Counted from the stretch's first letter, positions 7,194-40,635 are shown. The stretch is DNA of 64,000 bases from Lepidodermella squamata (GCA_047495785.1 JBLDXI010000033.1:1674001-1738000); one strand, 5' to 3'. Notes: generated by a model not told the origin, from the sequence alone. Numbers and translations are program-made.

Positions 7194-7347
7194 AAATGAC
7201 GGCAATCGGTTCGAAAACTTGAAAATTCCTCCTTAATAACATGATGATTTTTCTTTAATTTACTTTGATTATTAACTCGATTTTTCACCTTCTTTCTTTC
7301 TTATAGATCTTATTTATTGATTTGTTGCCAAGATCTGAATTTTGACT

Positions 7348-9322: not shown

Positions 9323-10325
9323 TTAGATTTGCTGATGACCACCTCCTCGAATTTTGTGCACGATGAATAGCCAACCATCCTAAATAGTTGAGAAATGTGA
9401 AAAACGCCAAATAATTGTATAGTAAGGTTGCAATACCCGAGCCATGTAAGGTAGGTCCGCCCAGAACGACCGATGCGGGATGCGATCGACACCTTCTCGT
9501 TTCTGCACGAAGGTCATGAATAGGAATCCGCCGATAAAGTAGGTCCCAAGTAGTACGAAAAATCTGAAATTCCCAACAAATCATAAACTCAGATGTTTTG
9601 CCATGAGGCGTTTTACATGATCAAGAGAATAGATCCGCCGCTAAGACCGCCACCGCCGCTACCGCCAGCTCCAATGCATACTTGTTTGCCTCGGATTTCG
9701 GAGAACTTCAAAGGCAAAGTATAAAATTCGGATCTCTTTAAGAATTGCTTATGACCCTTACATAAAGCAAATATCCATCTGGGTCTGTATCGGCTTGATA
9801 TTTATCGGGATTAAATACGATGTCGGTAGTGTTGTCGCAAATTAAGAAAGCAACAGAACGCCTAATTTCGAAGTTATTTTCATCAGTTGGAAAATTAATC
9901 ACTTACACTTTCTGCGTTGCAGAGGTCTGAGTCACCAATGCAAGTCTCATGGTCGGATTTTGAGGCGTGTTTCGCATTTCAAACGTGGTGGTTGCAGGTT
10001 CGCCAATAACCGCGTCGTAGTTTTCACTCCAATCTGCCCATTGGCAAACGCTAGCTTTTTTATAGCAATCGGCATGTTCCGGTTTCGTGTCTAAAGCTGT
10101 GCAGAAGGTGAAGTCATAACTCCAGGTTTTGTCAGGATCGGCGCCTGATAGAATTTCGCCCTTCAGGTGCGAAAGATCAACGGTGCCAGTTCCGTCAGCG
10201 AGATCGCACGAGCAAGATCCTTGCTTGTAATCAGCCGTGCATGCCGAAGCTGCTGCTTCAACTGGCCGGTATGTCAGAGCGATTAAACTCAAGACAACGG
10301 CTAGAATGTGCTTCGGATTCACCAT
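9323..10325 (-). CDS. Single-domain MRH-like (CD-MPR/ATG27-like) type I membrane protein, isolated copy, 5 exons
   Basis: Signal peptide MVNPKHILAVVLSLIAL; C..C.C..DGTGTVDL, YDFTFC, SVCQW, RSVAFLIC, DPDGYLLY; GGLSGGSILLI + TM; tail EGVDRIPHRSFWADLPYMARDGWLF...GGHQQI*, matching the CD-MPR-family IP...FW..LP...DG pattern. Confidence 0.8.
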
Positions 10326-21959: not shown

Positions 21960-23090
21960 TTACTCGCCCACTTTCATGGCAGCTCGGACGCATTCACTGG
22001 CAGCAGTCAATCGGAATGCTTCGTTGATGTCCTTCAACTCCATGCGGTGAGTAATAAGCTCTTCTAGGGGCAGTAGACCAGCGAGGTAGTCGTCCATCTC
22101 CTTCGGAATGAAATCTCTTGGCTTCGCGCGTCCCAGATAAACGCCTCGAATTTTACGTCCTGGCATTAGGATACTGGTTGGTATGCTGAGCTCACCCGCA
22201 CCGGGCAAAACGCCGATAAAAATGCACTCGCCATACCCGGCGTTGCTAGCATTCAAGGCGTCAAGCATTGTATTTGCCTTCCCAACACATTCAAACGTAA
22301 AGTGGCAATATTTTCCTTTAGTAAGTTTCTGTATCTCCTCAACGGCATTGACAGTAGTTGGATCGATGAAATCAGTCGCCCCTAATTTCTTCGCAATTTC
22401 GAATTTCGAAGCTTTCGGATCGATCACGATAATTTTGCTTGCACCAGCTCGCTTGCAGCCGATGAGTACCGATAGACCAATGCAGCCTAGACCCCAAATT
22501 GCACAGTAGTCACCTGGTTTGACTTTGGCTGCCAAAACAGCCGATCCGTAACCGGTCGTGAACCCGCATCCGAGTAGGCCAGCAATGTCAAAAGGCGAAT
22601 TAGGGCTCAGTTTAGCCAACTGGACTTCGTTACAGACTGTATACTCGCTGAATGTCCCACATCCGACCATTGTGTATACTGTTTGGCCTTTGCAGGTGAA
22701 TCTCGATGTGCCATCTTCCAAGGAGCAATTCAACAAGCCAACTAAGCCTGCTGGGCAATTGTTGGACTCTGGATGACGGCAGGCATCGCAGTTGTAGCAT
22801 TGGCCCGGATAACCGAAGGGAACAACAATGTCTCCAACAGCTAAGCTTGTAACCCCCTCTCCGACGCTTTCGACTACGCCGGAGCCTTCGTGACCCAAGA
22901 TTATTGGAAACTTAATTGGAAGGAATTGCAGAGATCCGCCTCTCGCAAAGATATCAGAGTGGCAAACAGATGTTGATTTGATCTGAACGCGAACTTCACC
23001 GCGTTTCGGCGGTGCAACCTCGATTGTTTCGATTGAAAGAGGCTCGTTAGCGGCCCAGACAACGGCAGCTTTGCAGGTAATTACGGACAT
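21960..23090 (-). CDS. Zn-dependent medium-chain alcohol dehydrogenase, copy 2
   Basis: CHSD, GHEGSG, GLGCIG; 376 aa, close paralogue of copy 3. Confidence 0.95.
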   Translation of the reverse strand: MSVITCKAAVVWAANEPLSIETIEVAPPKRGEVRVQIKSTSVCHSDIFARGGSLQFLPIKFPIILGHEGSGVVESVGEGVTSLAVGDIVVPFGYPGQCYNCDACRHPESNNCPAGLVGLLNCSLEDGTSRFTCKGQTVYTMVGCGTFSEYTVCNEVQLAKLSPNSPFDIAGLLGCGFTTGYGSAVLAAKVKPGDYCAIWGLGCIGLSVLIGCKRAGASKIIVIDPKASKFEIAKKLGATDFIDPTTVNAVEEIQKLTKGKYCHFTFECVGKANTMLDALNASNAGYGECIFIGVLPGAGELSIPTSILMPGRKIRGVYLGRAKPRDFIPKEMDDYLAGLLPLEELITHRMELKDINEAFRLTAASECVRAAMKVGE

Positions 23091-23777: not shown

Positions 23778-25375
23778 ATTCTGATTCTGATTCTGATTCT
23801 GATTCTGATTTTATTATGCATTTTGTTTCACAACAGTTAGCAATAGGTTAGTTCTCGGCGCCTCACCTTAGAGGTCGTAAAATCCACTAGTTCATCTGAC
23901 TTAGATTTAAGATATCGCAGAAACACAGTATGAGAATTATTGACAATAGTTGAGGGCAGCCGGTTCCACGCTGCGCGCACACGCCTTGTGAAGCTGAACT
24001 GAGAGCTCGGATGTTCAAATCGTTTCATGACAACAGCATGAGCTGGTGAACGGGGATTTGAAGATATTTTGAAGAATGTAGAAAAGCTAGCATCCACACA
24101 GCCTAGGTACATTTTATGGCATAGCGCAAGGTCATGTTGAAAGCGTCTGATTTCAAGAGGACACAGTCCTAGTTTTTTACATCTTTCATAATACGAGGCA
24201 CCGTCAATCGATGAATAGTAGTCACTTCTATACAAAAGACGTTTAGTGAACCGGGCTTGAACCGCCTCCAGCTTGTCAATATCTGTTAAGTAGTACGGTG
24301 AATAGACCGAAGGGCAAAAATCTAACCGTGAAAGAGTGTATGTTTTGTACGCTTTTAAGCGGAGAGATTTCGATGCGAATGATTTGCATATCACGCCGTT
24401 AATCCTTTGGCAACGTGTAGACAACGCATTACAGTGCTCAGAGAACGTAAGGTGTTTATCAACAATAATTCCGAGATCTTTAACTGAATCGACAGCGTTT
24501 AGCTCAACATCTTTCACTTTGAACTGAAAGGGAAATGTGTTCTTTCCAAGACTGAGAACAACGCATTTTTTTGGATTAACGGATAAACCATGTGAATCAA
24601 GCCAGCTGATGATTTTATCGAGATCTGATTGAAGTTCGATGCAATCGGCAAGACAGCGAATAGCATGATACAGCTTCGTATCGTCAGCAAAGAATTTCGT
24701 GATCGATGATTTGATCAACGTGTTGACATCAGTCGTGAAGATCAGGAAAAGCAACGGTCCGAGCACCGAGCCTTGGGGCACTCCGGAAGTAACGGTCGAC
24801 CACGAGGACGTGCTGTTATTCACGGCTACTCTGAAATAGCGGTCACACAAGAAAGCTCTGATCCACGCGTGCACATTGCCACAGATATTGATGTCAGAAA
24901 GCTTAGATAATAACAAAGTAATCGGAACAACATCGAAGGCTTTCGAGAGGTCAAGATATATCACTATTACGTCAATTAGTTGATCAAGGAACTCTAACCA
25001 TTCGTTGACACACGACAACAACTGTGTTTCGCAACTTCTCCGTGACAGAAATCCAAACTGATTTTCTGAGATCAGATTGTTTCTATAAAGGTACAGTAGC
25101 ACATGATCCTTTACAATCGTTTCCTGAATTTTGCAGATCACACATGTCAGACTCACAGGGCGATAATTCCCAACACACGAGGCATCGCCGTTGCGTTTAA
25201 AGATCGGCGCGACATTCGCATGCTTCCAGACCACTGGGATCTCCCCTTGAGAAAACGAAATGTTGAAAATCATTGCCAAAGGTACAGCCAAGGAGAGAGA
25301 TAGCTTCTTTATAAGTACAGCCGGTAGATTATCGGCACCACCGATGGGTTTATCTTTAATACCACAGATCACATT
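23778..25375 (-). mobile_element. 5'-truncated non-LTR retrotransposon (CR1/L2-like), uninterrupted RT ORF 25372-23837, (AATCAG)n 3' tail
   Basis: NYRPVSLT, QFGF, YLDLSKAFD, SGVPQGSVLGPLLF, FADD, KDLGI; five ATTCTG units at 23778-23807 (+ strand) just past the stop; no endonuclease domain. Confidence 0.93.
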
Positions 25376-25698: not shown

Positions 25699-26826
25699 TC
25701 ATTCGCCAACTTTCATGGCAGCTCGGACGCATTCACTGGCAGCAGTTAATCGGAATGCTTCGTTGATGTCCTTCAACTCCATGCGGTGAGTAATGAGCTC
25801 GTCCATGGGCAGTAAACCAGCGAGGTAGTCATCCATCTCTTTTGGAAGGAAATCTCGGGGCTTCGCGCGACCCAGATAAACGCCTCGAATTTTGCGGCCA
25901 GGCATTAGGATACTGGTTGGGACGCTGAGTTCACCCATACCCGGCAAAACGCCTACAAAGATACATTCGCCATACCCGGCGTTGCTAGCATTTAAGGCAT
26001 CAAGCATTGTGCTGGCTTTACCAACACATTCGAACGCAAAGTTGCAATCCTTTCCTTTTGTAAGCTTCTTTATCTCCTCAACAGCATTGACAGCAGTTGG
26101 GTCGATGAAATCGGTCGCTCCCAATTTCCTCGCTATGTCGAATTTCGAAACTTTCGGATCCATGACGATGATTTTGCTCGCACCAGCTCGCTTGCAACCA
26201 ATGAGTACTGATAGACCAATGCAGCCGAGACCCCAAATCGCGCAGTAGTCACCCGGTTTGACTTTGGCTGCCAAGACCGCTGCTCCATAACCAGTCGTGA
26301 AGCCGCATCCAAAGACACCGGCAATGTCAAAAGGTGAATTAGGGCTCAGCTTAGCCAACTGGACTTCATTACAGACCGTATACTCGCTGAAGGTCCCGCA
26401 ACCAAATAAAGTGTTGACTGTTTGGCCTTTGCAGGTGAATCGAGAGGTGCCATCATCCAGGGAGCAATTAATCACGCTTTTCAGGCCAGATGAGCAATTG
26501 TTAGATTCTGGATGACGGCAATCATCACAGTTGTAGCATTGACTCGTAAAGCAGGGAACCACGATGTCTCCAATGGCTAGACTCGTAACCCCCTCTCCGA
26601 CGCTTTCGACTACGCCGGAGCCTTCGTGACCCAAAATTATTGGGAACTTGATAAGAAGGAATTGAACAGCTCCGCCTCTTGCAAAGAGATCAGTGTGACA
26701 AACAGATGTTGATTTGATTTGAACCCGAACTTCACCGCGTTTCGGCGGTGCAACCTCGATTGTTTCGATTGAAAGAGGCTCGTTAGCAGCCCAGGCAACT
26801 GCAGCTTTGCAAGTAATTACGGACAT
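25699..26826 (-). CDS. Zn-dependent medium-chain alcohol dehydrogenase, copy 3
   Basis: CHTD, GHEGSG, GLGCIG; 375 aa. Confidence 0.95.
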   Translation of the reverse strand: MSVITCKAAVAWAANEPLSIETIEVAPPKRGEVRVQIKSTSVCHTDLFARGGAVQFLLIKFPIILGHEGSGVVESVGEGVTSLAIGDIVVPCFTSQCYNCDDCRHPESNNCSSGLKSVINCSLDDGTSRFTCKGQTVNTLFGCGTFSEYTVCNEVQLAKLSPNSPFDIAGVFGCGFTTGYGAAVLAAKVKPGDYCAIWGLGCIGLSVLIGCKRAGASKIIVMDPKVSKFDIARKLGATDFIDPTAVNAVEEIKKLTKGKDCNFAFECVGKASTMLDALNASNAGYGECIFVGVLPGMGELSVPTSILMPGRKIRGVYLGRAKPRDFLPKEMDDYLAGLLPMDELITHRMELKDINEAFRLTAASECVRAAMKVGE

Positions 26827-27165: not shown

Positions 27166-28479
27166 TTATCCGCAATTTCCAGTAGACTTCGGCTTGTAGC
27201 CCCAATTGCAGCAGTAAATAGTGCCTGGAATAGGTGGCATATTCACGGAGTCGACAGATACCCCACCGCAATCGTGAGCGTTCAAAGGAGGCGACCCGGC
27301 AGGAACCCAGCCTGAGGTAGTGGTGCTTTGCGTAGAGCCTGCTTGCGTCGTGCTTCCCTGCTGAGTTGAGCTCTTTGTCGTAGTGCTTCCGCCTGCAGGT
27401 GTCGAGGTAGATGTCGGAGAGACACACTTACCATCACTAGGTACGAAACCCCAATTGCAGCAATAGATTGTGCCAGGGATGAGTGGCATGTTGACTTCAT
27501 CAGACGATTGGCCGTTACATGTGTAGGCATTAGCAGGAGGGCCAGCTGCTGAGTTACCGCCACCGTTCGGCGATGGAGGAGCTAGGCCTGTGTCGCATGG
27601 GACGGGCCTAACAGCCGTGATATTGCAGCTACCTGACGAGCCAGATGTTCCACATAACTGATTGAAAGCTAAGATGTCTACGTCGAAATGAGGGTGGTTG
27701 TTACTTGCACACCAGTCGCACTTGTCGACAGTTATCGAGCAGCCGTATCCGGCGCATGTGTTGTACCCGAGTTGTGGCAAAGTTCCAGCGCATGGATTGT
27801 TTGGGAACAAATTCACCGAGTCGTAGCACTGCTGTTCACCGCATTCGTGGTACATAGTTTGATTTTTAGTGTCAGTCGAACCATCGCATCGGCAATATCC
27901 AGCGCATCGATCCGTAACTGCGACCGTTACTTTGCCGCCAGCGCCTGTCAGCTCGTAGCATAGACCAGAGGCATGCGTAAGACCGAGACCCCAAAGAGGG
28001 ACGTAACTGCCACTGCTGATGTGGGCAATTTGCGAGTTCCCCATAAGCATTGGCGACGTAGCGGCGATTCCAACGCAATTCGCTCCATTTCCTGAGCTTT
28101 TGCATAAAGGGATGTTCAAAGAAGCTGACGCATTTTTGGCCATGTCATAAACGCTGCCACCCAAGGCTCCGTTGCAGCCTCCAGTGGACAATTCACAGTA
28201 GTAAGTTGCTTTCGCCATTGGTGACGTCGCCAGTCCCTTGTAAGTACCGGTATAGTTGCAACGTCCATCGACGCATTGGCCAAGACCAGGTGGGCAAGTT
28301 TCAGGATTGCAGAATACAGGTGGCAGGCAAACTTGAATCGAGCTCGTTATGTTGACGAGGCTCCCGAGCTGTTGATAACCGCATGCTTGAGCGCCGACGA
28401 TTTGCGAGACAATTCCGCCTGGCAGGTCTGTAGCCAAGGTGACCGTAACTAGAACAGAACAAAATATGACGAGAAACAT
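27166..28479 (-). CDS. Secreted expansin/GH45-like (DPBB) protein, 437 aa, with S/T linker and two Cys-rich C-terminal modules
   Basis: ATG 28479 starts signal peptide MFLVIFCSVLVTVTLA, TATATA at ~28536-28542; ATYY...GGC, GLCYELT...VTVAVTDRC, HPHFDVDILAFNQLC fit the expansin/GH45 DPBB pattern; intronless. Confidence 0.72.
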   Translation of the reverse strand: MFLVIFCSVLVTVTLATDLPGGIVSQIVGAQACGYQQLGSLVNITSSIQVCLPPVFCNPETCPPGLGQCVDGRCNYTGTYKGLATSPMAKATYYCELSTGGCNGALGGSVYDMAKNASASLNIPLCKSSGNGANCVGIAATSPMLMGNSQIAHISSGSYVPLWGLGLTHASGLCYELTGAGGKVTVAVTDRCAGYCRCDGSTDTKNQTMYHECGEQQCYDSVNLFPNNPCAGTLPQLGYNTCAGYGCSITVDKCDWCASNNHPHFDVDILAFNQLCGTSGSSGSCNITAVRPVPCDTGLAPPSPNGGGNSAAGPPANAYTCNGQSSDEVNMPLIPGTIYCCNWGFVPSDGKCVSPTSTSTPAGGSTTTKSSTQQGSTTQAGSTQSTTTSGWVPAGSPPLNAHDCGGVSVDSVNMPPIPGTIYCCNWGYKPKSTGNCG

Positions 28480-28803
28480 GTTGATTTGGTAATTATCAGG
28501 AAGAGAAACATATTTAATGGCTGGAATCGTTCGGTATATATACCCTGGAAAACAGCTGGCTAAACTTGCACCGACGTCAATTTTTTCATCGGCGTCATCC
28601 ATGAGTTTCGGAAAAACTACTGTTCTATTTACTTGCACCGAGACAACGACGTTTACCTCGTTGCGATATGCGTAAAACGGAAATCTTATGACGCAGTTTT
28701 CAGAACGTTTTATTGATGCAAAATATTTGCTTATTCAATCATGTGATAATATATCATGTCCAAGTTTGATCAGTCGCCAATTTTCGTCGTTACCAGCCGA
28801 TGT

Positions 28804-31800
28804 TTAGTGGCCGCAGAACTGTGATCCCGAAATTTCCATATACTGAAATTGGCATTTTTTACAACAAATAGCGGAGATGTGCGAAGAAACTTACGTAAAG
28901 CAAAGAACCATCAGAATCTCGTTGGCCTTGGTAACCAAATGGCTCGAATTTGATCTGCTTCGATGAATCGCAATTAAGGAAAGCGACTGTTCGTCTCGGA
29001 GTACCATCGGCGGCCGACGAGTCAGAGACTAGAGCTAAGGCTGCCTTAGGATGCCGATCATTGCTTCGTAATTCGAACCGGGTTGAATTGGCAGAGCCAA
29101 TATCCATGTTATAAGTTAGCTGCAGGGAATACTCGCATACCTAAATACACGAAGAAAGCTCGAAGCTGAATCAAATGATGTTAAGGTGGTTCGTACCGAA
29201 GCCACTCCGTTGCATAACGGATAGCGATTATCGTAGATAGGTTCAAAGAATGAGTAATCGTAGGAGAAGCGCTCTCCAGTTCCCGATATTCTTGATTTAA
29301 TATAGTGGGAATTAAAGTGAGAATCTTGAGCGCTAGAGCTTAAGTTACCTGGTGCCAACCAGAGAAGTAAGTTCGACTGTTCCTAAGCCATTAGTTGTAA
29401 CACATACGGGACTTCCTCTCTCGTAGTTTTTACAAGCTGCATTGCCTATACATTTTCTTACAGAAGACAGATGTCATTGAAAAAGTCAGCTCACTTGGAT
29501 TTCGAATAGGGCAAAAAGTAGAGCCAGTGAATTCGGCGAACTGCAAAATTTAAAAAATTCAATAACAATTTACAATAAAATATGCTGCTTTTACATAAAC
29601 TTGGTATCCATCGGCGTCTTTAAGGTAGCTGCCGCCAGTGGTGGTGAAGTTGGCAACAGCCGGTGCATCTGGCTCACATTTCAAAAAGGCCACCGTGCGA
29701 CTCTTGGTCGCGCTGTTGTCGTTGACAAGCGCTAAAGTAGGGCCGTTATTGTTCGCATCGTATCTAAGCTCGAATCGTGTGTTCTCCGGTCTCCCAATGT
29801 TCGACTCCGTATTCCAAACCGTGCTGTATCTGCAAACCTAGAGAATTCATAGAGTGATGAAAAGGGTTCGAACGAAGTTCCACAGAAAGATCTTATATCT
29901 TATCAAGATGGCCGTTCATATTACAAGAAATTGAAATTAAACTGAGGGGGAGCATTATGGGAAGCAATTTATAGGGTGGTAAAAAGGGGCTCCTTTCAAA
30001 TAGAAAAACTTCCTTTCAAATAGCGACAACTTACCGCTGCCGATTCGAAGCAGAATGAGAAGCTTGGATCCTTATTTACGCCACAAAAGGTGTAGGCATA
30101 ATTGTTATCAAAGTCATCTGATGCGACGTATCTGCAACACGACAGATTATCATAAAAATGAAACGATTTCTAAACATTTCTCACGGGTGGTAATAGGTTG
30201 TTTCGACTAGCGGCGATAGATCAACTGTCCCTGTTCCGTCCGCCAATTCGCAAATGCACCATCCGCGTAAATCAGGGTTGCATGCGGGTTTACCTTTTAA
30301 GTCATCAAACCTTAATGTACAGGCGGGATGGAATGAAGCTAGCTTTTACCGGGTAGAAGTCGAGGGCAGAAGTCAGATCCGAACATTTGGAAATACTACA
30401 AGGAAAATTGCAACCAGGCGCTGAATTAAACAATTGAACTCACGTAAATATCGTAGCCATCGAAGTCTTTTTCCTCAATGAACGATGCAGGAAAGAATAT
30501 AGGATCAGGGAGGTCGAGACATAATGTGAAGACAATCGAGCGGCGCTTGGTGACAGGGCTTTCCGTTACGATGGCCAAAGCAGGATTAGGGCTGGTGGAG
30601 GAATAAGGGCTGTGCCGTAGCTCGAACCTTGTTCGGAGAGGATCGCCAATCAGCACGCCACCAGGAGCAGCATCGAAATATTGGCAAGCTGATGACTGTT
30701 TATAGCAGTTATAGTGGGATGCGTTGTTAAGATAGTTGCAGAAGGCGTAGTCGTAATGGTAGCCGTCTTCGTAGCCATGAAGAGGCTCAATAGCGGTTTT
30801 CTGAACTAGCCTCGATAGGTCGATATTGCCCCCGCCATTTGCAAGCATGCAGGAGCAAGAGCCCTCTTTCGAGCTTTCCTCGCAAGCCGGTTTCGGATCT
30901 GAGAAATGCTTAGAGAATTAATCTAATATCATTAAAATCGAGTTGTTTACAAGGGTATTGAGGGCAAAAAGCGGATCCAGTCAAATTTGCATGCTAAAAA
31001 TAAGAATACTAAACTTTGAATCCAATTGGAAAATACAAACTTACATATAATTCTTTGCCATCAGTATCCCGAAGGCCATCGTAGTCGAAAGGTGAGAAAA
31101 CTGGCTCAGTGATACTCGAGTCGCAGGAGAGGAAAATAACCATTCTTGCTTCATATCCAAACATGGCATCAGCGACAATAGCCAAATTTTGGCTAGAGTA
31201 GAACGACGACCCGGGGTACGTTCTATATTCAAAACGCATGGTCGCCGGGTCTCCAAATGGTAGACCTCCCTGAGTTGGAGGAACAGTCTTTTGATAACGG
31301 CAGATCGCTGCATTTCCATTGCAACGAAATAGGAAGGGATCATTATTCAAGGTGCCAAAGAGCGCCAAGTCGTAAGAGTAATGGCCGGAAGGATCAGTAG
31401 CCTGATACGGTCGAGTTCGAGTAGAATTAGCGATTGATGTCAAATTCATCCACAGGTAGCTTGAGGACGGATCAGAAAGCTGGCACTCACTGTTGCCAGG
31501 TTTGTAGTCTTCATTTTGGCAGGCGGACCTTGGTGACGCTGGTCAAACTCAAAATTATAGTATTTCATGAAATTCCTTTCTATTGCTTACGTGGTTGAAT
31601 GGCACATGCATCTGCGCCTTTGATGACTAAGTACTATAAACATTACAATCTCTGTCTGTATTTGTTATTTCATCACTTAGACTGATTACTTACCTTTAGC
31701 TCATATCCATCCAAATCATAGAAATTGTTTCCTGGTTGGTAAGATTTCAATTCCAGAGTACGCTCGATACCGCAAACTAAAAACGAGATTGACCGCAAGC

Positions 31801-32986
31801 GGATATCCGTGGACTCCATGACCATCGCAGGTTGAGGTGAATTGCTCGGAAATAACCCTATAGGCGGGACGCGGGCTTCGAAACGCGTAGTTGAAGGATA
31901 TGCCTCGGCCTGATTGTATCGCATCGGAACGTACTGACAAATGGATGCTTTGTTGTAGCAGTTACGCTGGGTGATATTGCTTCTCAAAGCTGAACAGAAT
32001 GCCAAGTCGTATGATACGCCTTGAGCATCTTTGGTGCGAAGAGGTGAGTATGGGGTGGTCATTTGAAGAGCTCGATAGTCCAAGTAAGATCCGTTTTTCA
32101 TGCGACAGAAGCAATCACCAATATCGTAATCCACAGTACAAATAACGGGATCTTGGGGTACGAGTTAAAAAATCATTGATTTTAAAAATTGCACCACCAA
32201 ATACTTACCGACTTTTTGAGGGCAAAAAGCCGCGCCGTAGAAGTCCATAAACTATAAAACATGCACACCTTCAGCATGAAACGTTTTTGGAAAATAACTT
32301 ACAAATAGGTAAGCTCCATCGGTGTCTTTTTGCATGTTGTACTTGTAGGCTTGATAAGTGACCGAATCATTAGTTGGATCACAGTTGAGAAAAGCAACGC
32401 TTCTGGATATTCCGAGATTGACTATAGAATATACGCCACAAGTTGATTTCCTTGAAGTATGGTAACGCAATTCTTACAATCGGCATTTTCCGCCACAAGA
32501 GCTAGAGCAGGCTGTGGGTGGTTGTCGCCGGTCCTCATCTCGAATCGCACGCTTGAGGGCTGACCGAGATTTCTGCTGAAATTAGGCAAGTCGAACCTGC
32601 ATGCCTGTTTTTTCGCACAAAAATAAGTATGCGCTGTTGTAATTGAAGTTATTAATGCTGCTCCTCACCACTGCCTGTCGCTCGCAATCTTCCGCTCCCG
32701 TGTTATTCATAGCTTCGCAAAAAGTATAGAAGAAGCGCTCGGTGCTTAAAACGTCCGACGCGTAACTGTGATTTCAAAAATGACATTAGTCACTGGTGGT
32801 GGAAACAGGTGGTTCTTCTTACGGGTTTGTTCTGCTATGGACCCGCAAGCCAGTCAAATCTATAACCCCACTGCCATCAGCAAGGTTGCAGGTACAAGTC
32901 GTCGATGGGTACGTACAAGGGCTATTCGCGGCTATTACGACCCCGAAGCCAAGCAATGACACGAGAAGGAATGATTTCCCCAGCAT
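28804..32986 (-). CDS. Secreted protein of six tandem MRH-like domains, no TM segment, multi-exon
   Basis: Signal peptide MLGKSFLLVSLLGFGVVIA; hand-splicing gives six repeats (D1 ~32930-32210, D2 ~32150-31590, D3 ~31540-30950, D4 ~30900-30350, D5 ~30290-29495, D6 ~29445-28804), each with RFE.R, AL/M.V, R(S/T/M)..F..C, D.DG and G...C; ends SQFCGH*. Confidence 0.75.
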
Positions 32987-33559
32987 TTTGATTTTGTACT
33001 GTTCCGTGGGTAATTTTCCGACGTAATATATAGCAGTGCAAAAATGTCAAGAAACAAGAGCAAGCATAATCCCGGACTGTGGTATTGATAACTCCCGACT
33101 GACATGATGATAGCGAACTATGCTATTGTGGTACTTCAACAGCGAGATAGGCGAAAGAAACCGCGGACAAGCCTGTGACAGTGTGGGAAGATTCCACAAA
33201 TTTAGAATGTGTCCGTTCTATTCATAATAAGCCGTCTGCAGGGCGGGCATTAGATATCACAAATTTTGGCCGTCTTGCAGCATGAATAATTTTTCATTTG
33301 AAAGCTAATTTGTAGTGTAAAAGGTTACCTAATTATGCATAAGAGATAAGAGTTTTATAAGATTTTAACCATTAACAATTATCAAAACGCATATGATTGA
33401 ACTCAAAAAAACTGCTTGAGCTGATTCCTCACCGTTAGCTATGAAAGCCAAAAGTGATAATGAAGAACCTCTCGATGGCATGTGACACGTATATGTGGAC
33501 GGACACAGAACTACCCCGATTCTTTTGCTTGAAAAGAGCAAAGAAGTTCATTATCTCGT

Positions 33560-34060
33560 TCGATTTATCATTGTATTGATGCAAAGGTTGGGCTAAATTT
33601 CTGAATACATATTATTCTTGTTTTGTGGCTCAGGCAAAAAATCGGGGTCATCCTGCGTCCGTTCACATTTACGTCACATGCTCGATGGTGCCCTAAATTT
33701 TCACAAAACTTTCATTTTTGAACTTCAACCACATACTCCGTCAATTTGGATCCGCGATGACACTTGGAGGGTTCAGCTCAAGCAGTTATTTGAGCTTACC
33801 CACATTACAGGTGCATGATAGGCCTCATGATAGATCCAGGAGACTTCATGGTTGAGCAGTGGCAAGTGCTTGAAGAAAGTATGCCACTCTAAGGTATGCA
33901 TATATAGGTAGCCTTGGCCTAGTGATTTGGCGCCAGAAAATAACCAAATAATAGGATAATGTCTCATGGATAATGGCGATACACAAAAATATGGTCATCC
34001 AATAACTTCTTTTATTTCTGTTATTTTGCACATCATTCAAGAAACTAAAGTTTGACATGT
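33560..34060 (-). pseudogene. Possible degraded His-box membrane protein (sterol desaturase/fatty acid hydroxylase-like)
   Basis: Fragments in different frames: hydrophobic WMTIFLCIAII, YMHTLEWHTFFKH...YHEAYH, and HHRACDVN; no clean gene model. Confidence 0.2.
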
Positions 34061-34068
34061 AAATTGAA

Positions 34069-35179
34069 TCAATGTTTTCCACACATTTTCAAACTGTTCC
34101 AAGCGAAAAAGAATCCATCCTGTAAATTGAGTAAATAATCACGTACAAATAGGATATTCTATGAAAAAGAACCTTAGCGGCTCCGGGGAGAGATGCCCAG
34201 AATTGGCTGTGAGGGATTCGATCAGCTCCCTCTCGCTTTTTCCCGAAGGTCAGAAATACAAATCCGCCAATAAAATAAACACCAGCTACGGAGAAAAATC
34301 TGAAGGAAGATCGAAATTTTGTATTACAATCTCATCTTTTAGCGGCAAAATCAAACATAATGAGGAGAATAGAACCTCCACTCAGTCCGCCCCCACCGCT
34401 TGGACCGACCCATTCAACCGGGCAGAAGTCTTTACCGTAAAACTCCATGTACTGAAAAGGCGATTCGTTGTCAATTCGAGACCGATAGCTATAAGTGTAA
34501 ACTTACATAAAGAATGTAGCCATCTGGGTCTTTGTAGCCCTCATTGCCAAAAGAGTCGTATTTAACCTGCGTTGAAGTCGTATCGCAGTTCAAGAAAGCA
34601 ACAGATCTACGAGATTTTCCTGTATTATTTTCGCAAACTTATCAAAACGAAAGCGAAAATCAGAAAAATTCACCGTCGGCATTTTCAGAATCTGCGACCA
34701 ACGCTACTGCTGGCTGAGGATGTTTGTTGCTAGTTCGCATTTCGAATCGAATCGTTGATTGCCGGCCTAAATTTGCACTGTAAATGAAAGACCCGGAATA
34801 TTCGCACACCTATAAGGCTTGAACGATTTCAATTTTCAAATTGGTTGAAATGGTGAAAAATTACTGCAGCTGTGCCGTCACAATTAGGATAGCCAGTGTT
34901 CTGAAGGGTGCCACAGAATTGGTAGATGTATTTGTATTGATTATTTTGAGCTCGAAATCTATGGAATTTTTGTAAAAGGCCCAGAACATTGTAACAAGGA
35001 ATAACTTACGGGGTTGAAACCGTTAATTCCACCAAGCTAGTTAAGTTGATAGCTTTTGACTCGTCACTTTTCAATTGACAGATACACGTGTCTTTCTGGT
35101 CTGACACGCAAGCATTTTCGGCAGCTTTTGCTATAGGGTTCGCTATGAGAAGTAGAACTGCTAAGATTATAGGAAGCAT
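34069..35179 (-). CDS. Single-domain MRH-like type I receptor R1
   Basis: MLPIILAVLLLIANP signal; VCEYS, RFEMR, RRSVAFLNC, DPDGYILY; GGLSGGSILLI-TM; tail EGADRIPHSQFWASLPGAAKDGFFFAWNSLKMCGKH*. Confidence 0.78.
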
Positions 35180-35317
35180 TTCATAATACCTATTAAGCAA
35201 GAAAACTCATCAGATTATCATATCAAGGAAATCTTTTTAATTTTTCATTATCAATTAATTTTATTTCGCGAAGCCGTTGGAATCTCGAAGCGATGATCTT
35301 AGGAAATTTGAGGTGAT

Positions 35318-36372
35318 TTACCGACTCCCACATCGCATTTTGATGCTGTTGAAAACGTAGAAGAATCCATCCTTTGCCAGACCGGGTAAGGAAGTCCAAA
35401 GCGTGACGTTAGGTACGCGTTCGGCGCCCTCCTTCTTTTTGCCGAATGTTAAGAACAAGAAGCCGCCGACGAAGTACGTGAAAATCAGGCAGAAGAAACT
35501 TGTAAAATAGTGTTCAATGTTGATGGAAGTTACTTGAAATAAAGAACTTACACAATGCACAAAATGGAACCGATACTGAGTCCTCCATCGCCACCTCCGG
35601 TTGAAGGGGTGGTCGGTCCTACCGGAGTTGTTGGTCCAACGGGGGTGGTTGTGCAGAAATCTTTCCCGGTGAAGTCCATAAACTGTAGTTCGTAAACTTC
35701 AAAAATTGTTGAATTTTTTTTATTGCAAATCATACGTAGAGCAAGTAGTTATCTGGATCTTTTGTGCCCGAGGATCCATAGGAATCGTACTTGATGTTTG
35801 AAGCTGACTGATCGCAGTTCAAGAATGCTACCGAGCGCCGTAGAGTGCCATCTATGTTATTCGAATCCGCGACTAACGCGATCGTCGGCGAAGTATGCTG
35901 AGCGCCTGTTCGCATTTCAAAGCGGAATGTCGCTGCCCGACCTAAATCCATGTTGTAGCCTGTTGAGTATTCGCACACCTGTAAGATTTTTTACAATAAA
36001 TTACCCGCTAATGTCCTATAAATTAGATGAAAAATACCGCTGCAGCTCCATTGCAGTTATTAAGCGACGGCTGAGTTGTTATGGTTCCACAGAAAACATA
36101 CCAATACTTATAGTTGGTATTGGAACCAGCAATGCTAGGAAATTCACATTGGTTAAAAAAATAGATTGAAATGGCTCGTCCTCTCACGGGTTTTGTTGCG
36201 TTGTCCTAGAAAGAGCCGTCAGGTCAAGAATTTTATTCGAGCCATCGGACAATTCGCAATAGCATTGACCCCTAGCGGTCGACTTGCAAGCGTTTGTCGC
36301 CATGGGTAACGCCAATGAGTTGACGCTGACCACGAATACTAACAGGAGTAAGGCGATTGATTCTGCATGCAT
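35318..36372 (-). CDS. Single-domain MRH-like type I receptor R2 (3' end uncertain)
   Basis: MHAESIALLLLVFVVSV signal; CEYS, RRSVAFLNC, DPDNYLLY; TTPVGP-repeat stalk; TM; tail EGAERVPNVTLWTSLPGLAKDGFF...CGSR. Confidence 0.78.
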
Positions 36373-36554
36373 TTTGCTGTCTGTTAAATTTACTATTCTC
36401 AACTCCTGTGATTATAATAGCTCAATGACAGTGGGATAAACGCATTTTTTTATCTTCATTTTTACCCCCATTAAACCAACCAACTGATAAGAAGTGATGG
36501 CAACGTCAAATTTATTCAGCTAAAATTAAGCGTATATAAGTAAAAATTGTGAAT

Positions 36555-37583
36555 TTAAACACTAGTATAGGACGAGCCACAGCATTTTTTCGCCTTGTGA
36601 TAGGTGAATAAGACACCTTCCTTAATATTGCCAGGTAAAGTTCTTGTCCAGAATTCGAAATGTGGTAGCCGTTCAGAGCCTTCCTTCTTCGAGTAGAACG
36701 TCAGGAAAAGGAATCCTCCAATGAAATAAGTCGATAGCAGCGTGAAAAATCTGATCGGAAAAGCCTGATTTAAGCATTGATTTGTTCGAAATTCAAAAAC
36801 TCACATGATTAGAAGAATTGAACCAGCGCTCAGGTCGTCTCTTGGTGGTTCACGCGCGCAGATATAAGCAGATGTTAACACCATGTTCTGAAATTCACCC
36901 TTAAACTTATGAAAAATGACCTTTTCATCGATAAACTAACATAAAGAGTATAACCATCTGTATCTTGCTGATTTCCTTTCATTTCCAATTTAGCTGACGC
37001 AGTTGCTGCAGGATCACAATGAAGGAAAACGACAGTCCTTTTTGTTATACCCGGGCTAGCATCCATCACAAGAGCAGCCATCTCCTCATTGTTCTGATCT
37101 TTTCGAACTTCGAATCTAGTTGTTGCCGGAACTCCTATGTCGTTACCGTTCTTGCTAGTTGTTGAATACTCACAGGACTGAAACGCGAATCTTTGGTATC
37201 ACTCTAATCAATCTCAAAACCAAGGCTTACCGCTGCGATATTATTACAAGCCGGCCATGTTGTTTTACCAGTGATAACACCGCATAAAACCAGGTAATAA
37301 TTATTCTTCAAAGTTTGAGCGAAGATCCTATTAAAGTTTCAGATTTATGCATGACAGCTTCATTTTATCAATTTTACGGTGAATTTTTCGATTGTTCGAC
37401 TAGAGTAGTGAGATCTACGACTCCAGTGCCATTAGCCAGGTTGCAGATGCATTTGGTCGGTTCAGTCACCGAATCACTTTTGCAAGCATCCAAATAGTCG
37501 CAATTAACGAGACAAGATCCGATCAGGAGACATGCTGCGAAAATTCGGATGATTCTAATGTAATCTATATCTAAACTAGTCAT
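36555..37583 (-). CDS. Single-domain MRH-like type I receptor R3
   Basis: CICNLANGTGVVDL, SCEYS, KRTVVFLHC, DTDGYTLY; TM; tail EGSERLPHFEFWTRTLPGNIKEG...CCGSSYTSV*. Confidence 0.78.
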
Positions 37584-37888
37584 CTTTAGGGCGTTTAATG
37601 CGTCGGGAAAATGCCTACTGAAGGCCATAAGTCTGGGATAACTGATAAGGGAGCCCAATTATCAGCCGAAGTTTCGACCCCTTTATGCTTCTATGACTAA
37701 TGGCAAAGGAAAACAAAAAAATAACCGTACACTTTTTTGCTTTATTGGCAAGATAGCTATAGATAAAGATGAGTGTGGTGAAAATCGAGGAGAATATACA
37801 CAGAAATGTTGTCATCATCTACTTCACATAAATTTTCAGGACATTCAAGTATACAACACGCCTAAACAGTTGATTTGAATACAGCTTG

Positions 37889-39076
37889 TCACTCTTTGTT
37901 GTAGCCGTAATCCGTTCCCATATCAGCGTCCTTGTAGCCAGTGTTCTCGAACTCCTGATACTGAGTTTGCGGCCGAAATCGAAAGCAAATGACATCGAAA
38001 CAATCCTTCACATTTAGGGATATATTTCACATTTCTGGAAAATAAAAAGAAATTACCTTGAACTTTTGATAGACAACGTCATGCCAGAAGGTATAGTTCG
38101 GAATGCGCTGCACGCCGGTATGCTTATAAACGATTGTCATTACTAGGAAACCCCCGCCAAAGTAGGCGGCGATGATGACGATAATCCTGTCATATCGAAG
38201 CATTTGAAAATTAAATGGAAATTGCGGTTTTCAACGTACACGATGAAAAATATTGCGACACCACTCGTTCCTTCGCTAGCTTGGTGATGCTGCTGAATGG
38301 TACGACCATAATTCGGACAGACAGGGGCACCTCGAAGCTCGGAATACTGTAAAAGAAATTGTGTTCGAGGAAATATTGAAACGCTTTTAGGTTATACATA
38401 AAGCAGGTAGTTATCGTGATCTCGCTCGCCTTCGTAGCCTCGAGCTGTAAACGTAAGGTGCCGTTGATTCTCATCACATGTCAGAAATATAAGGCTTCGC
38501 CTAAATTTATCGGTAAATCCGAATAATTAAGGGCATTTTTAAGCTGGCTCCTTACGCATTGGACTGCTGTGTCGATTCCATGACGAGAGCAAGCCGTGGA
38601 GGCACGTAGTAGTCGGTTGCTTTTGTTTTGTAAGTCCGCCACTCGAAGCGAGTCGTCGACGGCTCGCCGATGTTCAAGCTATAAGGCAGTGGTTTAGTCC
38701 GCGTTTCGCACAGAGACGCGGCCTGATTGCAGCCCTGAAATTGCGGGTTCTTCATCTTACCACATAGGACAAGGTAATACGTGAAAAACCCTGTCGCAGA
38801 AGTTATCCTGATCGAAATTAAAATCGTAAATCTATCGAAATTCCATGGGTTAAAAACTTACGGTTGTCGCGAAGTTTGATCAGCAATATGGCGCAGGTCA
38901 ATTTTGCCGGTTCCATCGGCCAAGTTGCAGACGCAATTGCCATGTCGAAACTCCTTATCGCAGGCTTTAACTGGGGCAGTTTGAATAATCTGGGCGTTGC
39001 AAATCGAGAAGAGGCTGAGGAAAGTTAAAGCTAGGGATCGGGCTTTGATTTCCCCTAAACTTTTGCCATCTCTCAT
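37889..39076 (-). CDS. Single-domain MRH-like type I receptor R4
   Basis: CVCNLADGTGKIDL, LCETR, RSLIFLTC, DHDNYLLY; TM; longer tail ...QRIPNYTFW...QYQEFENTGYKDADMGTDYGYNKE*; TATAAA on the minus strand at ~39129-39134. Confidence 0.78.
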
Positions 39077-39580
39077 TTTTTTAAGCACAGGTGATGGATG
39101 AGCCTAGCATATACAGTCAAGTCAAGGATTTATAGGCAGTCGATTTGACGCGCGGCGTAGTACCTAGCGAAATAAGTGTAAAATTAACGAGAAAGCCGCG
39201 GCTTCCGGCTCGCCAAAAGCTCGAACTGCAATTAGGTAAGTCTGCGCACAGACGGCGAATGGCTCTTTCGATTTTGAGCTTCGCAGTATAGGTAGATTGC
39301 GAACGAGCGAACGCATCGAAATTTTAATATTAATCGCTATCATCAACAGTATTATTAACATTCGGCTTGTCATAACCGCGAGCGTCACTTTGAAATTAAA
39401 AAAGATAAGCACTGGAACACGCAGGTATGCGTTATCGATTTTTCTTCATAAATTTCGAAGAAAATCAATACCTATTAGGATCATATCGGCGGAGAAAATC
39501 CGCTTTTTTCGCCCTGTATGGATATTTTTCAATGAAAAAGAGTTATATAACGGCAAAATAGTGCTTTATTTAGTTTTCAA

Positions 39581-40635
39581 TCAAACATTATCATAACCAC
39601 CGCGACCTACGCACATTGATTTCAACTTGTTAAAAGTGAACAAGGTGCCCTCTTTCGCCGCACCGGGTAGCGTTGACCAGAAGTTGTAGTGAGGAACTCG
39701 TTCTGTTCCTTCTTTCTTCATGCCGAAAGTCAGAATCGCCGTTCCGCCGACGAAATAAACAAATATTAGAACGAAAAATCTGGATTTTCGAAGTTATTGG
39801 TGATTTAAAGATCGATCATTCGAGAATAAAACTAACATTATCAGCATAATGGACCCGGCGCTTAGGTCGTCACTGCCTCCACCTGTATTCCCGCCATCAG
39901 TGCAAAAATCACCTCCTTTAGTCTCCATATACTATCACAGAAACAGGAATAGTAAATTATTGAGTTATATACGGGAAATCAAATTACGAATAGCTGGTAG
40001 CCATCCTTGTCCTTTTCATTATTATTGCCCCTTGCTGTGAACACGACGGTTGCTTGGTTCTCGACGCATGTTAGAAATACGACAGTTCGCCTGGAATTTA
40101 GTAAAAATGTTATGACAATTTTTAAAATAAATTTTAGAATATTTCTCACGATGGTGGTGTCGTAGTCGTGGTGTCGGCTACCATTGCTAATCGAGCCCGC
40201 GTTCCGGCTGGGTAAACTCGCATTTCAAACCTCGTAGTGGCGACATCGCCAACGTTGAAGTTGTAAGAGCCTGTATCAGGCATACGTGTTTCGCAAACGG
40301 CAGCTTTGTTGTAGCACTGCGTCCACTGTGGATTTTTGATTATTGGGTTGCAAAATGCTAGGTAGTAGTAGTTCTCTTGCTTGTCATCCAAGACTCCGAG
40401 TCTAAAAGGGAATAATCAGTGTCTCATGACAGAGAGTCAAGACATCTTACGGATTGTTCGCGGTTGACTTAGAGAGACTAGTCAGGTCTATAGTGCCTGA
40501 ATTGTCGGCCAGCTTACAAACACACGTCCCTTGCCTATAGTCGGCGGTACAAGCTGAAGGTTCTGCATTGGCATGGTGAATCAAAATCGAACTGATAACG
40601 AATAAAGATCTTAGAAGTAAAGACAGTCGCTTCAT
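39581..40635 (-). CDS. Single-domain MRH-like type I receptor R5
   Basis: MKRLSLLLRSLFVISSILI signal; VCETR, RTVVFLTC, DKDGYQLF; TM; tail EGTERVPHYNFWSTLPGAAKEG...CVGRGGYDNV*. Confidence 0.8.

What the first reader, a model, noticed from the sequence alone, without database searches (positions are those of the whole stretch)
28804..40635. Diversified MRH-like lectin array: five membrane receptors plus a soluble six-domain form
Seen: six head-to-tail minus-strand genes, fragmented in the ORF track by tiny introns, encode 11 copies of one ~150-aa domain (a 12th at 9323-10325). Five are signal-domain-stalk-TM-tail proteins; one is secreted with six domains. Established: the TM/tail pattern is that of CD-MPR/ATG27-family P-type lectins, low-copy lysosomal sorting receptors in model animals. 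Inference: a lineage-specific glycan-recognition system in which a multivalent soluble agglutinin/opsonin and endocytic receptors of varied specificity capture food or microbial glycans. MRH-like expansions may exist in other invertebrates, so novelty must be tested.
Basis: partly seen in the sequence, partly recalled or inferred. Interest (0 to 1): 0.85.

Follow-up and report, generated by a model that had tools for sequence, protein, structure and literature searches.

The report
Expanded mannose-6-phosphate-receptor-like gene array
An unidentified small invertebrate has seven clustered, intact genes related to the lysosomal sorting receptor CD-MPR, one a secreted six-domain form with spliced RNA; animals usually have one or two such genes, and what these bind is untested.

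Summary
On the minus strand at 28804-40635 lie six intact genes with ~50-nt GT-AG introns. Five (A-E) encode a signal peptide, one ~160-aa Cys-rich domain, a stalk, one TM helix and a short tail. One (F, 1019 aa) has a signal peptide and six domains but no TM. A seventh gene (G, 10325-9323) adds the 12th domain. tblastn finds no further copies in the window.

Spliced RNA-type contigs confirm 14 of F's 18 introns directly.

The domain is a true MRH (P-type lectin) domain:
- A profile built only from window sequence hits CI-MPR in the PDB at E=5.9e-10.
- An AlphaFold model (pLDDT 91) matches CI-MPR and CD-MPR structures at Z 9.6-12.9.
- The TM/tail exons hit Pfam Man-6-P_recep and ATG27.

All 12 domains, with fragments from metagenomic relatives, form one clade (100/97). 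It is sister to other invertebrates' ATG27/CD-MPR-like proteins.

The canonical Gln-Arg-Glu-Tyr sugar-binding tetrad is altered in most domains, so mannose-6-phosphate binding cannot be assumed.

I read the family as CD-MPR-type trafficking receptors with diversified luminal pockets plus a secreted multivalent form. It is a new variant of a known kind. This scan also noted gene F separately (s1-422067).

The parts
39581..40635 (-). Gene A, 5 exons (40635-40451, 40401-40150, 40090-39988, 39931-39837, 39779-39581), 277 aa: signal, one MRH domain, Gly/Thr stalk, TM, tail ending in YDNV
   Evidence: tail exon hits ATG27 at E=7e-5 and Man-6-P_recep at E=4.5e-4
37889..39076 (-). Gene B, 6 exons (39076-38862, 38807-38556, 38500-38398, 38346-38240, 38186-38057, 38005-37889), 307 aa: signal, MRH, TM, longest tail with DCFDVIC and YQEF; the last intron is uncertain
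   Evidence: the TM/juxtamembrane exon hits Pfam Man-6-P_recep at 29.4 bits, above the 25.4 cut-off; the orthologous intron-less ORF P0003 is colinear across junction 1
36555..37583 (-). Gene C, 5 exons (37583-37378, 37327-37231, 37177-36941, 36887-36805, 36750-36555), 272 aa: signal, MRH, TM, tail ending in YTSV
   Evidence: tail exon hits Man-6-P_recep at 25.2 bits; orthologue P0002 is colinear across junctions 1 and 2
35318..36372 (-). Gene D, 5 exons (36372-36188, 36134-36038, 35978-35736, 35682-35552, 35498-35318), 278 aa: signal, MRH, Pro/Thr stalk, TM, tail
   Evidence: tail exon hits Man-6-P_recep at E=2e-5 and ATG27 at E=3e-5
34069..35179 (-). Gene E, 7 exons (35179-35010, 34958-34865, 34809-34674, 34619-34507, 34451-34357, 34299-34173, 34119-34069), 261 aa: signal, MRH, TM, tail
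   Evidence: X1 contigs cover 34100-34699, and one contig ends its fit exactly at the predicted last acceptor, 34118/34119
28804..32986 (-). Gene F, 19 exons, 1019 aa: signal peptide plus six MRH domains, no TM, no ER-retention motif. Domains 2-4 are each one large exon plus a 43-nt mini-exon for the last strand, and the domain boundaries are phase 1
   Evidence: 14 introns are seen directly as joints in X1 contigs and 3 more as loose ends
9323..10325 (-). Gene G, 5 exons (10325-9907, 9861-9762, 9705-9617, 9563-9437, 9379-9323), 263 aa: signal, MRH domain that keeps the canonical Gln (VCQW), TM, tail. It lies beside an arginine-kinase gene, as its orthologue does in a relative
   Evidence: orthologue P0004 is 55% identical; synteny with AK in L001

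Best explanation
This is a lineage-specific, tandemly duplicated family of CD-MPR/ATG27-type P-type-lectin receptors. Six genes (A-E, G) encode type-I membrane proteins with one luminal MRH domain and a conserved CD-MPR-like TM and juxtamembrane tail. A seventh (F) encodes six MRH domains in a row behind a signal peptide, so it is released into the secretory or endolysosomal lumen or outside the cell. Shown: the gene structures, intact frames, splicing and expression of F, the MRH fold and homology, the CD-MPR-type tail, monophyly of the family, and faster divergence of the luminal domain than of the TM/tail. Inferred: the membrane forms cycle between Golgi, endosomes and plasma membrane through their tails. 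The relevant tail features are the G-x-E-x-[IV]-P...FW...LP...DG block, cysteines where CD-MPR is palmitoylated, and YxxPhi in A, B and C. Each form would carry a different glycan-bearing cargo set, because the residues that line the sugar pocket in solved MPRs differ between paralogues but are kept between orthologues. F would act as a multivalent soluble binder of the same ligand class. Mannose-type glycans are the most likely ligands, but mannose-6-phosphate specificity is not predicted for most domains.
For: Spliced RNA-type contigs cover F, and X1's word share is similar for A-D. The window-only profile A1 hits 56 proteins among 1.84 billion, many of them 2000-2600-aa proteins with 7-14 matched stretches; the one scanned against Pfam (P0005) is CI-MPR-like (CIMR, 18 stretches) and is hit at E=1.1e-23. 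A1 also hits CI-MPR in the PDB at E=5.9e-10. The model of F domain 4 has pLDDT 91.3. Its top 40 structural matches are all MRH proteins: Z 12.9 at 2.2 A over 120 residues for IGF2R, Z 11.9 for CI-MPR domain 3, Z 9.6 for CD-MPR. The Atlas best match is the 'ATG27/Man-6-P receptor' cluster at TM 0.70. Tail exons hit PF02157 and PF09451, and B exceeds the curated cut-off. In the tree all 12 domains plus relatives' fragments form one clade at 100/97, with orthologous pairs C-P0002, G-P0004, B-P0003 and E-P0007. TM/tail identity is 50-65% among A, C, D, E and G, against 33-53% for the domains. The residue at the canonical-Gln position is kept between orthologues (E in B/P0003, C/P0002 and E/P0007; Q in G/P0004) but differs between paralogues. 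Two cysteines (C2 and C4) are lost together in F3 and F6, as expected for a real disulfide pair under structural constraint.
Against: No binding, localisation or cargo data exist. Pfam does not recognise the luminal exons on their own, and single-sequence searches against the PDB find nothing. The canonical Q-R-E-Y tetrad is complete in no domain. Gln is kept only in G, F2 and F4. Arg at the canonical position (8 residues before the Cys) is present only in D, E, F4 and F6. The acidic residue is Asp, not Glu, in all 12. No acidic-cluster dileucine (DxxLL) signal is present, and D, E and G lack YxxPhi. The high-confidence model used an alignment that included CI-MPR domains, so it is not independent of the homology call; the shallow-alignment model reached only pLDDT 64. 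Whether this genome has the enzymes that make mannose-6-phosphate could not be checked. Transcription of A-E and G rests on indirect evidence.
Confidence: 0.6

Rival explanations
1. Extracellular non-self or food recognition. F is a secreted multivalent agglutinin or opsonin, and A-E and G are endocytic surface receptors that take up microbial or food glycans.
For: F is secreted-type, hexavalent and expressed. Pocket residues are diversified between paralogues. The luminal domains evolve fast: 45-55% identity to a relative whose arginine kinase is 86% identical. YxxPhi endocytic motifs occur in A, B and C. Tandem expansion is typical of invertebrate recognition families.
Against: No P-type lectin described in the papers I found acts in immunity. 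The tail is the CD-MPR sorting tail, which in the model receptors serves mainly Golgi-endosome traffic. There are no expression-site or induction data. Paralogues are old and kept as orthologues, not recently churning.
Confidence: 0.2
2. Glycan-independent MRH proteins. The domains have lost lectin activity and bind proteins or act in membrane traffic as such, like IGF2R domain 11 (which binds IGF2) or yeast Atg27 in Atg9-vesicle traffic.
For: Canonical Gln is replaced by Glu or Arg in 9 of 12 domains, and canonical Arg is absent in 8 of 12. The tails score about as well against ATG27 as against Man-6-P_recep. The best structural match is a non-lectin IGF2R domain.
Against: An Arg one position away is invariant in 12 of 12 domains, an Asp at the Glu position is invariant, and the Tyr is kept in 9 of 12. 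That pattern suggests a retained, modified pocket. Seven paralogues and a six-domain soluble form are hard to explain by an Atg27-like housekeeping role.
Confidence: 0.15
3. Decaying duplicates or an annotation artefact: the array is a set of pseudogenes or mis-joined ORFs.
For: None beyond the fragmentation of the raw ORF track.
Against: All seven frames are intact across 48 introns with consensus splice sites. RNA contigs are spliced. Orthologues are kept in a relative. Cysteines and motifs are conserved.
Confidence: 0.02

Closest known systems
[quoted passage not shown]
   Same: Type-I membrane protein of about 270 aa with one MRH domain, one TM helix and a tail whose juxtamembrane part is recognisably homologous (FW diaromatic motif, cysteines at the palmitoylation position). 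The fold matches at Z 9.6.
   Different: There are seven genes rather than one. The disulfide pattern differs: extra N-terminal C-x-C cysteines are present, and the C106-C141-type pair is absent. Gln is replaced in most copies, Asp stands for Glu, and there is no DxxLL signal. Sequence similarity of the luminal domain is detectable only with profiles.
Cation-independent MPR / IGF2R and Drosophila LERP (tandem CIMR repeats, PF00878)
   Same: F strings MRH domains head to tail. The window's domain profile aligns best with CI-MPR repeats, especially the M6P-binding domain 3.
   Different: F has 6 domains rather than 15 or 5, and no TM or tail. Its domains belong to the local CD-MPR-like clade, not to CI-MPR repeats.
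Uncharacterised invertebrate 'ATG27/Man-6-P receptor' proteins (for example Limulus XP_013790814.1, Tubulanus XP_074655141.1, Atlas clusters from molluscs and cnidarians)
   Same: Same architecture and the same N-terminal CxC...DGSGxIDL motif. They are the sister clade in the tree.
   Different: They pass the Pfam cut-offs, whereas the window's luminal exons do not. They lack the family-specific TxRFExR and DxDGYxLY motifs. A long stem branch (1.2 changes per site) separates the two groups.
Expanded MPR family of Trichomonas vaginalis and other parabasalids (bioRxiv 10.64898/2026.10.22.760878)
   Same: Lineage-specific expansion to 5-12 MPR paralogues with one to five MRH domains. That paper reports paralogue-specific hydrolase cargo.
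   Different: That expansion is in a protist lineage and arose independently. All the Trichomonas vaginalis MPRs described there keep a TM. Here the expansion is in an animal, is tandemly arrayed, and includes a TM-less six-domain form.

Membership tests
MRH domain (P-type lectin fold) superfamily | Flattened beta-barrel MRH fold | tested here: met
   The model of F domain 4 has pLDDT 91.3. VIA-align gives Z 12.9, 11.9 and 9.6 to IGF2R, CI-MPR domain 3 and CD-MPR, and the top 40 rows are all MRH proteins. Caveat: the alignment used for the model contained CI-MPR repeats.
MRH domain (P-type lectin fold) superfamily | Statistically significant sequence homology to known MRH domains | tested here: met
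   The profile of window sequences alone hits CI-MPR in the PDB at E=5.9e-10. It hits P0005, which carries 18 Pfam CIMR stretches, at E=1.1e-23.
MRH domain (P-type lectin fold) superfamily | Conserved Gln-Arg-Glu-Tyr sugar-binding tetrad | tested here: not met
   Mapped through the HMMER alignment to CI-MPR domain 3 and the 12-domain alignment. Gln is kept in 3 of 12 domains (G, F2, F4). Arg at the canonical position is kept in 4 of 12 (D, E, F4, F6), with an invariant Arg one residue later. Asp replaces Glu in 12 of 12. Tyr is kept in 9 of 12.
CD-MPR family (Pfam PF02157 Man-6-P_recep) | Score above Pfam's curated cut-off | tested here: inconclusive
   Only single exons could be submitted. 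B's TM exon scores 29.4 against the 25.4 cut-off, which is met. C scores 25.2, D 24.2 and A 19.8, all below it. The luminal exons give no hit. Full-length spliced proteins were not tested.
CD-MPR family (Pfam PF02157 Man-6-P_recep) | Single MRH domain, one TM helix and a cytosolic tail with the FW motif | tested here: met
   FW is present in A, B, C, E and G, and LW in D.
CD-MPR family (Pfam PF02157 Man-6-P_recep) | C-terminal acidic-cluster dileucine (DxxLL) GGA-binding signal | tested here: not met
   None of the six tails contains DxxLL. The motif definition is from established knowledge of CD-MPR.
CD-MPR family (Pfam PF02157 Man-6-P_recep) | Binding of mannose-6-phosphate and sorting of lysosomal hydrolases | not testable with these tools
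   This needs binding and trafficking experiments.
ATG27 (Pfam PF09451) | Score above Pfam's curated cut-off (27 bits) | tested here: inconclusive
   Tail exons of D and A score 24.4 and 23.2 bits, below the cut-off. Sister-clade proteins P0045 and P0055 pass.
CI-MPR/LERP-type tandem MRH receptors | Tandem MRH repeats anchored by a TM helix and sorting tail | tested here: not met
   F has six repeats but no TM or tail. Only 166 nt separate its stop from the next gene.

The most novel reading that the evidence does not exclude
P-type (MRH) lectins, known in animals only as intracellular sorting and ER quality-control lectins, have here been co-opted into an extracellular glycan-recognition system. 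In it a secreted hexavalent MRH protein cross-links foreign or dietary glycans, and a battery of membrane MRH receptors with different pockets internalises them.
Probability: 0.15. Interest if true: 0.8.

Novelty: new variant of a known kind. Interest (0 to 1): 0.55.

Why it matters
To my knowledge, model animals carry one CD-MPR and one CI-MPR, and Drosophila carries only LERP. A recent survey of 53 eukaryotes calls the seven MPR paralogues of Trichomonas vaginalis the largest set it found (bioRxiv 10.64898/2026.10.22.760878). One 31-kb stretch of this animal genome already matches that number. It also adds a TM-less six-domain form, and its altered pocket residues are paralogue-specific yet kept between species.

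If the domains bind different glycans, the family would be a natural panel for learning how the MRH pocket is retuned. It would also show that cargo sorting by P-type lectins can diversify in animals. If the domains act outside the cell, that would be a new role for this lectin class.

Tried and rejected
- **Pfam on luminal exons:** no hit for any luminal-domain exon. The domain is too diverged for the curated models when cut at exon borders.
- **Word-indexed protein search:** a 21-row alignment (A2) that included short exon fragments found nothing. The fragments were probably misaligned (mean column identity 19%), and the window's own spliced proteins are not in that collection.
- **First AlphaFold run:** with the 15-row window-only alignment it gave pLDDT 63.7, and Foldseek found no significant match, although the top rows were already MPRs.
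- **Single-sequence searches against the PDB:** phmmer with F domain 4 and with the homologue P0045 gave only chance hits.
- **Naming the organism:** the arginine-kinase neighbour's best match is an unnamed metagenome contig (86%), and named hits reach only 69% or less (sponges), so the taxon stays open. Notes from other windows guess a rotifer; I did not verify this.
- **Full-length spliced proteins:** they could not be given to Pfam, structure prediction or the database tools, because they have no single reference and I did not type them.
- **dN/dS against the relative:** not attempted, because 45-55% protein identity means synonymous sites are saturated.
- **Pseudogene or artefact reading:** rejected (see rivals).
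Full report
**1. What is in the sequence**

The minus strand between 28804 and 40635 is broken into many short ORFs. I chained them with GT-AG introns that keep the frame. This gives six complete genes lying head to tail.

Introns are 45-64 nt, apart from one of 197 nt. Donors are of GTAAGT/GTGAGT type.

Genes A-E (277, 307, 272, 278 and 261 aa) share one layout:
- a hydrophobic N-terminus
- a Cys-rich domain of about 160 aa
- a Gly/Pro/Thr-rich stalk
- one strongly hydrophobic helix
- a tail of 45-72 aa

Gene F (1019 aa, 19 exons) has the N-terminal signal-like segment and six copies of the domain. It has no second hydrophobic segment, and only 166 nt separate its stop from the next gene.

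The '12th copy' at 9323-10325 is a seventh complete gene, G (263 aa, 5 exons), with the same layout as A-E. tblastn with all 12 domains finds these 12 copies in the 64-kb window and nothing else.

**2. Expression and support for the models**

Two public runs hold the F region. When laid on 28700-34699, the contigs of run X1 skip 14 of F's 18 predicted introns exactly, with CT..AC ends on the plus strand. Loose ends match three more introns.

X1 has zero depth in the intergenic stretch 33100-33500, so it behaves as a transcriptome assembly. The joints include every domain-to-domain boundary that could be seen, so F is one spliced message.

One X1 contig stops fitting exactly at the last predicted acceptor of gene E. 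X1 holds 0.44 of the sampled words of the A-D region against 0.43 for F. That fits transcription of A-D, but it is indirect, because only one laying call was allowed.

Independent support comes from a relative. Intron-less ORFs P0002 and P0003 on metagenome contigs align colinearly, without gaps at the junctions, to my spliced C and B proteins.

**3. What the domain is**

Pfam finds nothing in the luminal exons. A single domain finds nothing in the PDB by sequence.

A profile built only from window sequences (alignment A1) is a different matter. It hits just 56 proteins among 1.84 billion representatives. Many of them are 2000-2600-aa proteins with 7-14 matched stretches.

The one scanned, P0005, carries 18 Pfam CIMR stretches, so it is a CI-MPR-like protein; the profile hits it at E=1.1e-23. 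The same profile hits CI-MPR chains in the PDB at E=5.9e-10, aligning best with the mannose-6-phosphate-binding domain 3.

I then added homologous domains to the alignment (A3). With it, AlphaFold models F domain 4 at mean pLDDT 91.3. The window-only alignment had reached only 63.7.

The structural matches are consistent:

| Comparison | Result |
|---|---|
| Foldseek, top 42 rows | all MPR or Elapor MRH structures |
| VIA-align, IGF2R | Z 12.9, 2.2 A over 120 residues |
| VIA-align, CI-MPR domain 3 | Z 11.9 |
| VIA-align, CD-MPR | Z 9.6 |
| ESM Atlas, nearest cluster (263-aa 'ATG27/Man-6-P receptor', mostly molluscs) | TM 0.70 |

The model is not independent of the homology call, because the alignment held CI-MPR repeats. 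Profile and fold nevertheless agree.

**4. What the tail is**

The TM and juxtamembrane exons hit two Pfam families, Man-6-P_recep (PF02157, cut-off 25.4 bits) and ATG27 (PF09451, cut-off 27 bits):

| Gene | Man-6-P_recep (bits) | ATG27 (bits) |
|---|---|---|
| B | 29.4 (above cut-off) | not hit |
| C | 25.2 | not hit |
| D | 24.2 | 24.4 |
| A | 19.8 | 23.2 |

All six tails share the block G-x-[ED]-R-[IVL]-P-x-x-x-[FL]-W-x-x-L-P-x-x-x-[KR]-[DE]-G (B departs from it after the Trp). Most then have a cysteine. From my own knowledge of CD-MPR, this corresponds to the segment with the Phe-Trp late-endosome retrieval motif and the palmitoylated cysteines.

A and C end in YDNV and YTSV, and B contains YQEF; all are YxxPhi motifs. 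None has the acidic-cluster dileucine signal of vertebrate MPRs.

**5. How the family relates to others**

In a maximum-likelihood tree, all 12 window domains group with ORF fragments from unnamed metagenome contigs as one clade. Support is 100/97 and the stem is long, 1.2 changes per site.

The sister group holds uncharacterised proteins:
- a nemertean protein, 289 aa
- a horseshoe crab protein, 215 aa, auto-named 'ATG27'
- a calcareous sponge protein with two domains
- an oyster protein, 934 aa

Inside the clade, C, G, B and E each pair with a fragment from the relative. The paralogues are therefore older than that species split.

One 24-kb contig of the relative carries orthologues of A, B, C and G within 8 kb. 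G again lies beside an arginine-kinase gene. These orthologues are only 45-55% identical, while the neighbouring arginine kinase is 86% identical.

Among the paralogues, TM/tail identity is 50-65% (A, C, D, E, G) and domain identity is 27-53%. The luminal part is the fast-evolving part.

F's six domains do not group together. F1, F5 and F6 lie near D and E, and F3 lies near B, but support for these placements is weak.

**6. The putative sugar pocket**

I used the HMMER alignment to bovine CI-MPR domain 3. In the chain's numbering, the essential Gln, Arg, Glu and Tyr are Q392, R435, E460 and Y465. The identity of these residues is from my own knowledge of the MPR literature.

I mapped the four positions onto the 12-domain alignment:

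| Canonical position | State in the 12 domains |
|---|---|
| Gln | Q in G, F2, F4; E in A-E and F6; R in F1, F3, F5 |
| Arg (8 residues before the conserved Cys) | R only in D, E, F4, F6; an Arg one residue later is invariant |
| Glu | Asp in all 12 (motif DxDGYxLY) |
| Tyr | Y in 9, F in 2, K in 1 |

The residue at the Gln position is the same in each orthologous pair. It is E in B/P0003, C/P0002 and E/P0007, and Q in G/P0004. So it is a constrained, paralogue-specific feature rather than drift.

The cysteine pattern also differs from solved MPRs. There are three N-terminal cysteines (C, then CxC). The pair that corresponds to C429-C463 of CI-MPR domain 3 is absent. F3 and F6 have lost the second and fourth cysteines together, which suggests those two form a disulfide.

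**7. Interpretation**

The anatomy shows a diversified set of CD-MPR-type receptors plus a soluble multivalent relative. The conserved tail argues for adaptor-dependent cycling in the Golgi-endosome-surface system. The divergent but constrained pockets argue for different ligands.

Whether the ligands are phosphomannosyl tags on the animal's own hydrolases, other mannose-type glycans, or foreign glycans cannot be decided here. I rank them as follows:
- Cargo sorting with diversified specificity: about 0.6.
- A glycan-independent role: about 0.15.

**8. Novelty**

Full-text searches found no paper on an MPR-like expansion in rotifers or other invertebrates. A 2024 review of tandem-repeat lectins lists only CI-MPR as an example of the P-type class (PMC11186620).

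A 2026 preprint reports seven MPR paralogues in Trichomonas vaginalis as the largest set among 53 eukaryotes, and 5-12 in other parabasalids. It finds TM-less homologues only in three protists (10.64898/2026.10.22.760878).

The present array is thus an independent, animal case of the same phenomenon, with its own sequence signature. It is a new variant of a known kind.

Notes from other windows of this genome guess a rotifer; I could not confirm that.

Noticed in passing
window 27166-28638 (-): An intronless 490-aa ORF lies directly downstream of gene F. It has a weak DPBB_1 (expansin/GH45-like) Pfam hit and two C-terminal Cys/Trp-rich 'YCCNWG' modules behind Ser/Thr-rich linkers. Another note of this scan (s1-422122) flags it as a horizontal-transfer candidate.
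   Followed up: partly
window 2137-3222 (+) and 7342-8445 (+): Two intronless arginine-kinase-type genes (ATP-gua_Ptrans). The second is 86% identical to a gene on the relative's contig L001, where it also neighbours the G-like MRH gene. The best named matches are sponge arginine kinases at 69%.
   Followed up: partly
window 19933-21063, 21960-23090, 25699-26826 (-), with 23837-25372 (-): Three intronless ORFs of about 375 aa; the two scanned against Pfam are zinc alcohol-dehydrogenase paralogues (21960-23090 was not scanned). A reverse-transcriptase ORF (RVT_1) is inserted between the second and third.
   Followed up: no
window 32318-32584 and elsewhere in 28700-34699: Run X2 holds two contigs over the same stretch, one identical and one with 23 differences in 267 letters. 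16 of its 44 laid contigs are only 90-95% alike. This points to a second divergent haplotype, homoeologue or strain of the MRH array.
   Followed up: no
window 32416-32478: X1 has a second joint in gene F, from 32416 to 32478, with AT..AC ends and five extra letters (GATGG), at about the same depth as the regular joint at 32421. It could be an alternative acceptor or an allelic form.
   Followed up: no
L001 6742-7925 (-): In the relative's contig a protein-kinase gene sits between the A/B-like pair and the C/G-like pair. In the window these genes are arranged differently, with A-F together and G 19 kb away, so the array has been rearranged since the split.
   Followed up: no
P0013 (ENA contig, 7.2 kb): An unrelated organism encodes a 1019-aa protein with six nearly identical MRH-like repeats followed by a TM helix. 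It happens to be the same length as gene F but is not its orthologue, and looks like another unexplored MRH expansion.
   Followed up: no
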